DNA from: Octopus sinensis
Lineage: Eukaryota
Reading direction: 5' to 3'
DNA: 64,000 nucleotides
NCBI RefSeq assembly: GCF_006345805.1
Contig: NC_043010.1
Location: 8,804,001 to 8,868,000 of the forward strand
Below, piece by piece: positions 1,573-3,373 of this stretch (the stretch's first letter is position 1; every line of letters begins with the position of its first letter). The position numbers were made by a program, and so were the translations under genes. The notes under the pieces are model-generated. The model was given only the letters and a program-made list of their open reading frames with translations. It searched no databases and was not told where the DNA came from.

Positions 1573-1732
1573 TTACCCATCAAAAGGCCGATTATATGAT
1601 AGTAGCAAATAATCAATATTGTTATCTCTACTCCATTGTTCATATTGACTCGATATTGTAGTGTAACTATCAGTAAATGAGATGCTATCTAACCTTTGTG
1701 TTAACACCGTGAATTCATAAAACTTGACCAAT
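1573..1732 (-). CDS. Putative protocadherin terminal exon (K-LVKFYEFTVLTQRLDSISFTDSYTTISSQYEQWSRDNNIDYLLLSYNRPFDG*)
   Basis: Acceptor ttactatatttgcatag|A; 52 open, non-repetitive codons in the frame predicted from the 47-nt exon; AATAAA at 1523-1518 downstream of the stop. Confidence 0.55.
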
Positions 1733-1903
1733 CTATGCAAATATAGTAATTTTCTCAATGCTTTTTTTCTTTTTCTTTGCACTTCTCTGATAAAAAAAAA
1801 TGTGCATCTTTTCTTCTTTTTTCTATTCCATTTAAAGGAGACAGCTATTTACAGAGTTGAAAACAAAAACAAAAAAGAATATATATATATATATATATAA
1901 TAT

Positions 1904-1946
<43 letters not shown>

Positions 1947-2467
1947 ACAATATATATCTAATATTTTTTTCAGTTTCTTTAATATATATATATATAGATA
2001 TATTAAAGAAATTCAGATAATGAAATACAAATTTTCATAACAATTGAATAGGTTATATATTTGTAGTTCTATCCAACCTACACCTAGAATTTTTTAGTAT
2101 TAGTTCTCTTTGTATTTAACTATTGAGTCATGTACATTTTGCCCTTCTCTCTTATGCAGCTTAAGAGAAATAGAAATAATTTGTGTATCACACGAGACCA
2201 TAATATAGGTCAACAATATTTGGCCGGATGTAAAATTGGACTTTTCAGTCTAACACACAAAGGCTGTCATCCTTTCTGCTTAGATATTTTATAATGAATT
2301 GCTTCTAGTTTATTATATGTTAGGAACATATACATTTTTTAAGAATTTGAAAAATAGCCTCTAATAGTTGATAAAGGCCACTCATATAAAAGAATTTTAT
2401 CAATTGTTTAACACATTTCTGATGTTATTTTATTGACCCCTAATGATATAAAAGACAGAGTCTAGAG

Positions 2468-2747
2468 CAGTGATTCCCAAACTTTTTCAGGCTGCTGCCT
2501 CCTTGACTCCCTGGTTACTTTCCTTGCTCCACAACCACAAACATAGACCACTTTCTGCTGCAAATTCAAAACAACAACTCTATTTCACAAATAAAACTTA
2601 ACCTAATCTATCCATTATTTTGGAATTTTTTGCATTCATCACCCCTTTTTGGCTGCCCCAACTATTGCCCATTTTTATTCAATGACCACCCCCTGAATCT
2701 TTCCACCACCCTCAAAGGGGCAGCACTGTCCACTTTAGGAACTACTT
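2468..2747. mobile_element. hAT/Charlie-type MITE
   Basis: Ends cagtgattcccaaact / actttaggaactactt (degenerate TIR); 8-bp TSD-like gtctagag (2460-2467) / gtctagat (2748-2755), the typical Charlie target. Confidence 0.7.
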
Positions 2748-2969
2748 GTCTAGATTATCATTTTCTCTAATGCTATCTTTCACTAAACTAGTCACTGATT
2801 TTCAGTTTAGAATAAAGACAGATACTAAAATGTCTCTAGATAGTCTCACGACAGCTATTAAAATAATGACTGCAATTTATTTATAACACTTAGTGGCATT
2901 CCAGTGAAATAGATGGAAAGGTGAAATTGAGAAACACTGATAAGATGCTTTATTTAGTTAGCTCTTTAA

Positions 2970-3190
2970 CCCTTTCGTTACCAACCCGGCTGAAACCGGC
3001 TCTGGCTCTTTAGTACAAATGTCTGGTTTTCCTAATTTTTTAATTAAAATCTTCCACCAAACCTTAGTCACAATTTATGTCCCTAACTCTAGCTTAATGA
3101 TAACGATGTTATTTTACTTAATTCTTTGTTATATTTAACATAATTGGAAGAAACACTGAGCATCTCAAAATAAATTCAGTAACAAAAGGG
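2970..3190. mobile_element. piggyBac-like MITE, family PB1
   Basis: TTAA on both sides; TIRs ccctttcgttac / gtaacaaaaggg; further copies at 58707-58922 and 50768-50902. Confidence 0.85.
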
Positions 3191-3326
3191 TTAAACCATA
3201 TATTTACTCATGTAAAGCTAGTTGGGGTTACTCAACAATACACAGTGATTGTGCCCTTTTATATAAAGCTGGCTCTATATGATCATTGAATGAGAAAGAT
3301 ATTTATTTCTTAAAAATTCCGCTCAC

Positions 3327-3373
3327 TTTTCATCACTATGCTGTTTTCCTGCTGCCAGAAGTCAATGTACCAC
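3327..3373 (-). CDS. Putative protocadherin internal 47-nt exon (V V H stop [11 protein letters not shown])
   Basis: Acceptor ttgttttaatttcag|G and donor AAA|GTGAGC. Phase 0 in matches the upstream donor; phase 2 out matches the next exon. In-frame TGA at 3364-3362. Confidence 0.6.

What the first reader, a model, noticed from the sequence alone, without database searches (positions are those of the whole stretch)
1573..3373. Protocadherin tail has a single UGA-C stop inside an otherwise open, phase-matched 65-codon extension: candidate readthrough switch or recent truncation
Seen: the large exon ends at phase 0; a 47-nt exon with good AG/GT sites reads GTG GTA CAT TGA CTT CTG GCA GCA GGA AAA CAG CAT AGT GAT GAA AA. 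It exits at phase 2, exactly the phase that opens the 52-codon, non-repetitive frame of the 1732-1573 exon (...DSYTTISSQYEQWSRDNNIDYLLL...). Established: UGA followed by C is the leakiest stop context, and a stop fewer than 50-55 nt upstream of the last junction (here 35 nt) escapes the exon-junction NMD rule. Inference: the gene could make a short (...ASQVVH*) and a long readthrough isoform; intron retention gives a third end (...SQVSI*). That would be a way to diversify protocadherin cytoplasmic tails without vertebrate-style constant exons. The simpler alternative is a recent nonsense change (e.g. CGA to TGA) or an assembly error.
Basis: partly seen in the sequence, partly recalled or inferred. 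Interest (0 to 1): 0.8.

Follow-up and report, generated by a model that had tools for sequence, protein, structure and literature searches.

The report
Stop-carrying alternative exon in octopus protocadherin
The 47-base exon with the TGA is a real, already annotated alternative exon of an Octopus sinensis protocadherin gene that gives a short-tailed isoform and is conserved as far as the argonaut, and I found no evidence that the stop is read through.

Summary
The window is Octopus sinensis chromosome CM016872.1 and the gene is a protocadherin on the minus strand. The sequence facts in the finding are correct. These are the phase-0 donor at 6355, the 47-nt AG/GT exon at 3373-3327 reading GTG GTA CAT TGA C, and an open frame in 1732-1573 that fits its exit phase.

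The exon and its stop are neither a private mutation nor an assembly error. The isoform ending ...ELASQVVH (820 aa) is annotated in O. sinensis, O. bimaculoides and O. vulgaris. GTGGTACATTGA plus about 60 nt of upstream intron is nearly invariant in Argonauta hians.

The readthrough idea is not supported:
- In Argonauta the exon is 49 nt, not 47, and the base after the stop is A, not C, so neither the frame after the stop nor the exit phase is kept.
- The 160-nt "exon" has no homologue in Argonauta, in 1.84 billion representative proteins, or in any annotated isoform.
- Stop-free stretches of 52 codons or more occur 245 times on this strand of the window.

The real long tails (956 and 898 aa) come from exons 6 to 50 kb beyond the window edge. 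The best reading is an ordinary regulated alternative exon that gives a tail-less isoform or a decay-targeted transcript.

The parts
6355..8805 (-). Large first coding exon of the protocadherin (signal peptide, cadherin repeats, TM, proximal cytoplasmic part; 817 codons). It ends ...ELASQ in phase 0 at the donor CAA|GTGAGT.
   Evidence: Identical to XP_036364472-74. Pfam Cadherin E 6.8e-73 with 5 repeats. All 12 annotated orthologue products share the ...ELASQ| junction.
6343..6354 (-). Start of intron 1.
   Evidence: Similar 'QVS...' ends in Logan/ENA ORF calls of paralogues look like read-into-intron products. No annotated isoform of this gene has this end.
3374..3434 (-). About 60 nt of intron upstream of the alternative exon (polypyrimidine tract, acceptor). 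It is nearly invariant between Octopus and Argonauta.
   Evidence: Alignment. BLAST block L001 15372-15496 against L003 9954-10079, 85.8% identity, E 1e-33.
3327..3373 (-). 47-nt alternative exon (cassette or start of an alternative terminal exon), with AG acceptor and GTGAG donor. It encodes Val-Val-His-stop.
   Evidence: Large exon plus this exon equals the 820-aa isoform P0125 exactly. The isoform is also annotated in O. bimaculoides and O. vulgaris. The exon is identical in O. bimaculoides and is 49 nt in Argonauta.
3362..3364 (-). In-frame TGA stop (codon 4 of the exon), followed by C at 3361.
   Evidence: GTGGTACATTGA is invariant in three genomes. The next base is C in Octopus and A in Argonauta.
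3323..3430 (-). Predicted pre-mRNA hairpin. The upstream intron arm pairs with the 3' half of the exon and with the donor GU. The acceptor sits near the apical loop and the TGA in an internal loop.
   Evidence: MFE z-score -2.5 (O. sinensis) and -2.9 (Argonauta). There are 36 consensus pairs and none covaries, so the structure is inferred, not proven.
1573..1732 (-). It is an open frame of 52 codons plus TAA inside a 91-codon stop-free stretch (1848-1576). It is not supported as coding.
   Evidence: Against: no homologue, in no annotated isoform, and open stretches of this length are common. Weakly for: codon usage. The O. bimaculoides assembly has an N gap at this position.

Best explanation
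This is an ordinary regulated alternative exon that carries a conserved stop.

The gene is a three-part octopus protocadherin gene:
- one large exon for the ectodomain, the TM segment and about 100 cytoplasmic residues;
- a 154-nt middle exon (PCLQKEM...);
- one of two alternative last exons.

These give tails of 139 or 81 residues. The longest ends in the family's conserved ...WNLPxKNSFTxxTKPLPAVP motif. When the 47-nt exon in intron 1 is included, translation stops after three extra residues (VVH). The result is an 820-aa isoform that keeps the adhesive ectodomain and the membrane-proximal tail but lacks the distal tail. It is inferred to be adhesion-competent and altered in signalling.

The sequence after the TGA is conserved as RNA, not as protein. 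It contains a purine-rich stretch and the donor, and it is one arm of a predicted hairpin. The near-invariant upstream intron and the hairpin that buries both splice sites are the likely means by which inclusion is kept optional. That last step is inferred.

Shown: the exon, the stop, its conservation, the annotated isoforms, and the position of the real tail exons. Inferred: what the short isoform does, how inclusion is regulated, and which exon follows the 47-nt exon in the mRNA.
For: - The window is 100% identical to O. sinensis CM016872.1.
- Large exon plus 47-nt exon equals P0125 (820 aa). Large exon plus PCLQ exon plus last exon equals P0126 (956 aa). Both matches are exact.
- ...ASQVVH products are annotated in O. 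sinensis, O. bimaculoides (two annotation releases) and O. vulgaris. The O. vulgaris alternative forms came from PASA updates using Iso-Seq and RNA-seq (PMC10700109).
- The acceptor region, GTGGTACATTGA and the GTGAG donor are invariant in Argonauta hians, where the rest of the intron does not align.
- Two 1-nt insertions after the TGA in Argonauta break any frame.
- About 17 annotated paralogue products of 796-839 aa also end within about 27 residues of the same junction. Others carry the long tail with the conserved motif.
- The closest paralogue has the same large exon, ~150-nt exon, last exon layout.
Against: - I could not obtain a transcript sequence. No Logan or TSA fragment of this gene was found. 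Inclusion of the exon therefore rests on database gene models, and the exon that follows it is unknown.
- A protein function for the short isoform is not shown. A 3-residue addition could equally mark an unproductive transcript.
- The hairpin has no covariation support.
- The 160-nt ORF has a mildly coding-like codon usage that this explanation leaves to chance.
Confidence: 0.6

Rival explanations
1. The exon is a poison exon. Its inclusion does not serve to make a protein. It places a premature stop upstream of further exon junctions, so the mRNA is degraded and the amount of full-length protocadherin is tuned. This is alternative splicing coupled to nonsense-mediated decay.
For: - The donor GTGAG is conserved in Argonauta, which suggests the exon is internal.
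- If it is spliced to the PCLQ exon, the stop lies 35 nt before that junction and 189 nt before the last junction. By the vertebrate 50-55-nt rule (general knowledge) that is NMD-eligible.
- Near-invariant flanking intron is typical of regulated stop-carrying exons.
- The exon length is not a multiple of 3 (47 or 49 nt).
Against: - How NMD targets are chosen in cephalopods is not known to me.
- Short-tail isoforms are annotated for many paralogues with different short ends, and truncated tails are functional in vertebrate protocadherins (PMC7339444). A protein product is therefore at least as plausible.
- An AATAAA lies 20 nt after the donor in Octopus, so the exon could also be terminal.
Confidence: 0.25
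2. This is the reader's reading: programmed recoding of the stop. Either the ribosome reads through UGA-C, or (a cephalopod-specific variant) A-to-I editing turns UGA into UGG. Both would extend the protein into the rest of the 47-nt exon and a downstream exon such as 1732-1573.
For: - The UGA is conserved and is followed by C in Octopus.
- The frame is open for 64 further codons if the exon is spliced to 1732.
- The open frame of 1732-1573 has the best codon-usage score of its six frames and falls in the top 3% of non-coding open stretches.
- The exon lies in a predicted double-stranded region, which is what ADAR needs.
- Heavy recoding by editing in cephalopod neural transcripts is established knowledge.
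Against: - Argonauta has TGA-A, a 49-nt exon and a different exit phase, so no common extension can be encoded.
- No counterpart of 1732-1573 exists in the Argonauta locus, the paralogue locus, 1.84 billion representative proteins or Pfam.
- None of the 12 annotated products contains it.
- Open stretches of this length are common: 245 on this strand, and 117 codons open by chance through the true exons read out of frame.
- The TGA sits in an 8-nt internal loop of the predicted hairpin, not in a helix.
- No SECIS or other known recoding RNA was found.
Confidence: 0.04
3. The conserved block is not primarily an exon. It would be an intronic non-coding element, such as a structured RNA, a microRNA-like hairpin or an enhancer, and the gene models that include it would reflect rare or spurious splicing.
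For: - The hairpin has z-scores of -2.5 and -2.9 in two distant species.
- Conservation is strongest in the intronic arm and includes synonymous positions of VVH.
Against: - Consensus AG and GTGAG sit exactly at the borders of the modelled exon, and both are conserved.
- Two independent annotation pipelines in three species include it.
- The apical loop is invariant and part of the 3' arm is variable, which is the opposite of the usual microRNA pattern.
- No Rfam family matches there.
Confidence: 0.05
4. The stop is a recent nonsense mutation (for example CGA>TGA) or an assembly error in an exon that is normally coding.
For: None beyond its being the simplest reading of a single genome.
Against: - TGA is invariant in three independently assembled genomes of species that, for Octopus, diverged about 34 Myr ago, and further back for Argonauta (PMC10700109).
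- The O. vulgaris protein also ends in VVH.
Confidence: 0.01

Closest known systems
Alternative cytoplasmic-tail isoforms of vertebrate protocadherins: alpha-Pcdh A, B and O forms; long and short Pcdh8/arcadlin; Pcdh1, Pcdh7 and Pcdh11X tail variants (PMC7339444)
   Same: One ectodomain/TM exon is joined to different downstream exons. This gives long, short or nearly absent cytoplasmic tails. The short forms lack conserved distal motifs.
   Different: - The octopus gene has its own private tail exons, not constant exons shared by a cluster (PMC9068888).
- The short form here arises from a 47-nt exon with a stop in its fourth codon.
- No function has been tested in octopus.
Stop-carrying ('poison') cassette exons with highly conserved flanks, coupled to nonsense-mediated decay (best known from SR-protein and other splicing-factor genes; general knowledge)
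   Same: - It is a short exon whose length is not a multiple of three.
- It has an early in-frame stop.
- The intron next to it is nearly invariant over a long evolutionary distance.
   Different: - The host gene is an adhesion receptor, not a splicing regulator.
- Decay of the included form has not been tested.
- A stable truncated protein is equally possible.
Programmed stop-codon readthrough genes (for example the UGA-CUAG class in mammals and the several hundred Drosophila cases; PMC5868278, PMC3840789)
   Same: A conserved UGA followed by C in Octopus, with an open frame after it.
   Different: - There is no conservation of the downstream frame, because indels occur in Argonauta.
- The +4 base is not conserved.
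- The downstream 'exon' has no homologues.
- The full CUAG motif is absent; the sequence here is CUUC.

Membership tests
Protocadherin (cadherin superfamily), octopod expansion | Several tandem extracellular cadherin repeats, one TM segment and a cytoplasmic tail, with the ectodomain and TM segment in one large exon | tested here: met
   - Pfam Cadherin E 6.8e-73 with 5 matched repeats, plus Cadherin_2 at the N-terminus.
- A single 2451-nt exon.
- 52-63% identity to over 100 octopod protocadherins.
Protocadherin (cadherin superfamily), octopod expansion | Distal cytoplasmic motif shared by the octopod paralogues (...WNLPxxNSFTxYxKPLPxxP) | tested here: met
   The motif is present in the 956-aa isoform (...QPWNLPSKNSFTSFTKPLPAVP) and in most long paralogues. 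It is absent from the 820-aa isoform.
Regulated alternative exon giving a truncated isoform | Consensus splice sites on both sides, conserved across species | tested here: met
   tttaatttcag|GTG...AAA|gtgag is invariant at both borders in O. sinensis, O. bimaculoides and A. hians.
Regulated alternative exon giving a truncated isoform | Transcripts both with and without the exon | tested here: inconclusive
   Products with the exon (820 aa) and without it (897, 898, 956 aa) are annotated in three species. One pipeline used Iso-Seq/PASA. I could not retrieve any transcript or read.
Poison exon / splicing coupled to NMD | Premature stop more than 50-55 nt upstream of the last exon junction, and the included mRNA stabilised when NMD is blocked | not testable with these tools
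   The geometry would fit if the next exon is the PCLQ exon, since the stop would be 189 nt before the last junction. The next exon and the mRNA stability are unknown.
Programmed stop-codon readthrough | Stop codon conserved | tested here: met
   TGA is invariant in three genomes.
Programmed stop-codon readthrough | Downstream frame conserved as protein-coding, with no frame-breaking indels and an amino-acid-level constraint | tested here: not met
   - Two 1-nt insertions after the stop in Argonauta change 47 nt to 49 nt and shift the exit phase from 2 to 1.
- The proposed next exon has no counterpart in Argonauta and no homologue anywhere.
Programmed stop-codon readthrough | Leaky context conserved (UGA-C, ideally UGA-CUAG) | tested here: not met
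   The context is UGA CUU C in Octopus and UGA ACA A in Argonauta.
Programmed stop-codon readthrough | Ribosome density or peptides past the stop | not testable with these tools
   No ribosome-profiling or proteomic data are available here.
Selenoprotein (UGA = Sec) | SECIS element in the 3' UTR | tested here: not met
   The Rfam scan of window 1-9200 at E up to 1 found no SECIS. It returned only sub-threshold matches to microsatellite-like microRNA models.

The most novel reading that the evidence does not exclude
The conserved hairpin formed by the near-invariant upstream intron and the 47-nt exon would be a working RNA switch. It would hide both splice sites of the stop-carrying exon. As an ADAR substrate in neurons, its editing or unwinding would decide between tail-less and full-length protocadherin. 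In the strongest form, editing of UGA to UGG in Octopus would open the frame into a lineage-specific extension such as 1732-1573.
Probability: 0.05. Interest if true: 0.6.

Novelty: already known. Interest (0 to 1): 0.15.

Why it matters
As proposed, a readthrough switch in a protocadherin tail would have been a new way to diversify neuronal recognition receptors. The evidence does not support it.

What remains is modest:
- Octopod protocadherin genes do not share constant exons. Even so, they vary their cytoplasmic tails by ordinary alternative splicing, much as vertebrate delta- and alpha-protocadherins do.
- In this unusually well-conserved orthologue (about 90% protein identity between Octopus and Argonauta), the stop-carrying exon and its flanks have been kept since the two lineages split. 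That argues the short or unproductive form is used.

This is a useful pointer for anyone studying protocadherin signalling in cephalopods, but it is not a surprise.

Tried and rejected
1. Transcript evidence.
- An exact look-up of the 820-aa isoform found nothing, because only the longest product per gene is on record.
- A search with the 93-aa gene-specific cytoplasmic part found no candidates, because the word index was too sparse.
- A 204-aa C-terminal query found only two paralogue fragments.
- All three homologue searches are now used.

2. O. bimaculoides as a test of the 160-nt ORF. I first read the absence of a BLAST hit as non-conservation. The alignment then showed an 834-nt run of N at exactly that place. 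The comparison is void and I withdrew that inference.

3. O. vulgaris DNA and the O. sinensis paralogue P0006 could not be fetched, because the gene ranges exceed 100 kb.

4. O. sinensis against O. bimaculoides as a conservation profile. The species are too close. Alignable intron is already 90-96% identical, so the cassette's 96-100% says little. Only Argonauta is informative.

5. A cassette homologue in the closest paralogue locus (L004) was not found. The exon is specific to this orthologue group or has diverged beyond recognition.

6. Selenocysteine or another known recoding RNA: no Rfam support.

7. Covariation support for the hairpin: none, because the pairs are invariant.

8. A dated Octopus-Argonauta divergence time from the argonaut genome paper was not found in the text.
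Full report
**Where the window comes from and what the gene is**

The first 18,805 bases of the window are 100% identical to Octopus sinensis chromosome CM016872.1 (assembly GCA_006345805.1). 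Locus L001 coordinate equals 18806 minus window coordinate.

The only long ORF in the window (6343-9063, minus strand) is the large exon of a protocadherin. Pfam finds five cadherin repeats (E 6.8e-73). The protein is 52-63% identical to more than a hundred octopod protocadherins.

Its orthologue group is unusually conserved. O. sinensis, O. vulgaris, O. bimaculoides and Argonauta hians products fall in one 90% cluster.

**Checking the observation**

Every sequence statement in the finding is correct.
- The large exon ends ...GCG AGC CAA|GTGAGT at 6355, in phase 0.
- 3373-3327 is 47 nt between tttaatttcag| and |gtgagc.
- It reads GTG GTA CAT TGA CTT CTG GCA GCA GGA AAA CAG CAT AGT GAT GAA AA.
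- The TGA is at 3364-3362 and the C at 3361. The exon exits in phase 2.
- With that phase, 1732-1573 reads K LVKFYEF...NRPFDG and then TAA.

**The 47-nt exon is real and already annotated**

Twelve annotated products of the orthologue group all share the ...ELASQ| junction. They continue in three ways:

| Length | Continuation after ...ELASQ |
|---|---|
| 956 aa | PCLQKEM...ETLP, then DPKSS...WNLPSKNSFTSFTKPLPAVP |
| 897/898 aa | PCLQKEM...ETLP, then (V)AQKFF...HHASFF |
| 820 aa | VVH, then stop |

The 820-aa form is annotated in three species:
- O. sinensis, XP_036364474.1;
- O. bimaculoides, XP_052829024.1, and XP_014774865.1 in the earlier release;
- O. vulgaris, CAI9732467.1.

Large exon plus the first 12 nt of the 47-nt exon translates exactly to the O. 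sinensis 820-aa protein. Large exon plus two distant exons gives the 956-aa protein exactly.

The O. vulgaris annotation added alternative forms by PASA from Iso-Seq and RNA-seq assemblies (PMC10700109). The exon is therefore supported by two independent pipelines.

I could not retrieve a transcript myself.

**Where the real long tails are**

None of the tail exons lies in the window. In L001:
- the PCLQ exon (154 nt) is at 25069-25222, which is 6.3 kb beyond window position 1;
- the last exon of the 956-aa form starts at 50367;
- the last exon of the 898-aa form starts near 68577.

The 47-nt exon therefore sits inside a 12.6-kb intron.

The closest paralogue (L004) has the same layout of large exon, ~150-nt exon and last exon. 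This fits published statements that cephalopod protocadherins are multi-exonic genes without shared constant exons (PMC6339937; PMC9068888).

**Conservation of the exon and its stop**

Against O. bimaculoides the exon is identical and its surroundings are 96-100% identical. Alignable intron in general is already 90-96% identical, so that comparison has little power.

Argonauta hians is the informative species.
- In the whole intron, the only collinear block that aligns is the 47-nt exon with about 60 nt of upstream intron (85.8% identity, E 1e-33).
- In the three-way alignment, the polypyrimidine tract, the acceptor, GTGGTACATTGA and the donor GTGAG are invariant.
- The stop is therefore old. 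O. bimaculoides split from the O. vulgaris/sinensis clade about 34 Myr ago (PMC10700109), and Argonauta belongs to another family.

This refutes a recent nonsense change or an assembly error.

**Why readthrough is not supported**

1. After the TGA, Argonauta differs in the next seven bases (TGA-A instead of TGA-C). It also has two single-base insertions. Its exon is 49 nt and exits in phase 1, not 2. No common extension can be encoded. The conservation after the stop is at the nucleotide level, in a purine-rich stretch and the donor.

2. The proposed last exon 1732-1573 has no counterpart in any of these:
   - the Argonauta locus (best tblastn E about 1, not collinear);
   - the paralogue locus;
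   - any annotated isoform;
   - 1.84 billion representative proteins (0 hits at E up to 0.001);
   - Pfam.

3. Open frames of this size are the rule in this sequence.
   - The window holds 245 stop-free stretches of 52 codons or more on the minus strand and 232 on the plus strand.
   - Ten of them lie in the 3.3 kb downstream of the exon.
   - The stop frequency in the intron is 5.7% of codons.
   - If the 47-nt exon is joined to the true PCLQ and last exons, the out-of-frame reading after the TGA stays open for 117 codons.
   - Phase-matching is cheap too. A better acceptor (T9ATCAG|A, 1787/1786) 54 nt upstream has the same phase.

4. No SECIS or other known recoding RNA is present.

5. The NMD-escape argument assumes that 1732-1573 is the last exon. 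If the next exon is the PCLQ exon, the stop lies 189 nt before the last junction.

The open frame of 1732-1573 scores 0.045 bit per codon in a crude model of coding against intron codon usage.
- This matches the true tail exons (0.056, 0.03, -0.02).
- It is better than its other five frames.
- It is reached by only 3 of 91 non-repetitive non-coding open stretches.

Several candidate ORFs lie downstream, so this is roughly a 1-in-5 event. I treat it as weak evidence that the region might be a young or untranslated exon. It is not evidence of translation.

The O. bimaculoides assembly has an 834-nt run of N exactly there. My first impression of 'not conserved in O. bimaculoides' was wrong, and that test remains open.

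**Most likely mechanism**

Inclusion of the 47-nt exon ends the reading frame after VVH.

The product keeps the ectodomain, the TM segment and the proximal 100 cytoplasmic residues. It loses the distal tail with the motif shared by the long paralogues.

About 17 annotated paralogue products of 796-839 aa likewise end within about 27 residues of the same junction, with unrelated short ends. Short tails are therefore a family habit.

This parallels vertebrate protocadherins. Alpha-Pcdh has A, B and O forms, and Pcdh8, Pcdh1, Pcdh7 and Pcdh11X have long and short tails with different activities (PMC7339444).

Whether the octopus short form is a working protein or an NMD substrate cannot be decided here. 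I give the protein reading about 0.6 and the decay reading about 0.25.

**A possible regulatory structure**

In O. sinensis, O. bimaculoides and Argonauta, the upstream intron arm is predicted to pair with the 3' half of the exon and the donor GU. The acceptor lies near the apical loop and the TGA in an internal loop.
- The z-scores are -2.5 and -2.9.
- The 36 consensus pairs are all invariant or single-sided. The structure is therefore neither confirmed nor contradicted by covariation.

It could keep the exon optional by hiding its splice sites. It could also be an ADAR substrate. Both are inferences.

**Verdict**

The exon and the short isoform are real and already in public annotation. The readthrough switch and the recent-truncation alternative both fail. 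Interest is low. The small new points are the deep conservation of the stop-carrying exon and the hairpin around it.

Noticed in passing
window 2965-3195 (also 58702-58927 and 50891-50907): A MITE-like 231-bp element with 17-nt terminal inverted repeats (TTTAACCCTTTCGTTAC) lies 130 nt downstream of the 47-nt exon. It is absent from the orthologous site in O. bimaculoides. The window holds a second full copy and a solo end. The repeat motif matches 5 times against 0.02 expected.
   Followed up: partly
window 3323-3430 (L001 15376-15483; L003 about 9958-10065): A predicted pre-mRNA hairpin pairs the near-invariant upstream intron with the 3' half of the 47-nt exon and its donor GU. The z-scores are -2.5 and -2.9 in Octopus and Argonauta. 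There is no covariation.
   Followed up: partly
If this region is ever spliced, this site looks the more likely one.
   Followed up: no
That species therefore cannot be used to test it.
   Followed up: yes
L001 15433-15479 + 25069-25222 + 50367-50632: Read in the frame set by the 47-nt exon, the true downstream exons stay free of stops for 117 codons after the TGA. This is a long out-of-frame open stretch in real coding exons.
   Followed up: no
L001 about 68570-68580: The 897- and 898-aa isoforms differ by one Val at the junction into the last exon. The 897 form fits the acceptor ttgtag|CTCAG. The 898 form would need an acceptor that is not preceded by AG in this assembly.
   Followed up: no
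window 13680-14098, 30753-31178, 34314-34714, 40420-40837, 55983-56395: An interspersed repeat of about 415 bp is present in at least five copies in the window and several more in L001. The copies are 91-95% identical to one another.
   Followed up: no
window 900-2050, 3580-4700, 9100-11700: Long TA/CA/GA-type microsatellite tracts produce many spurious ORFs of 100-300 codons. They also produce dozens of sub-threshold Rfam matches to microRNA models built from simple repeats (mir-297, mir-466, mir-1277).
   Followed up: no
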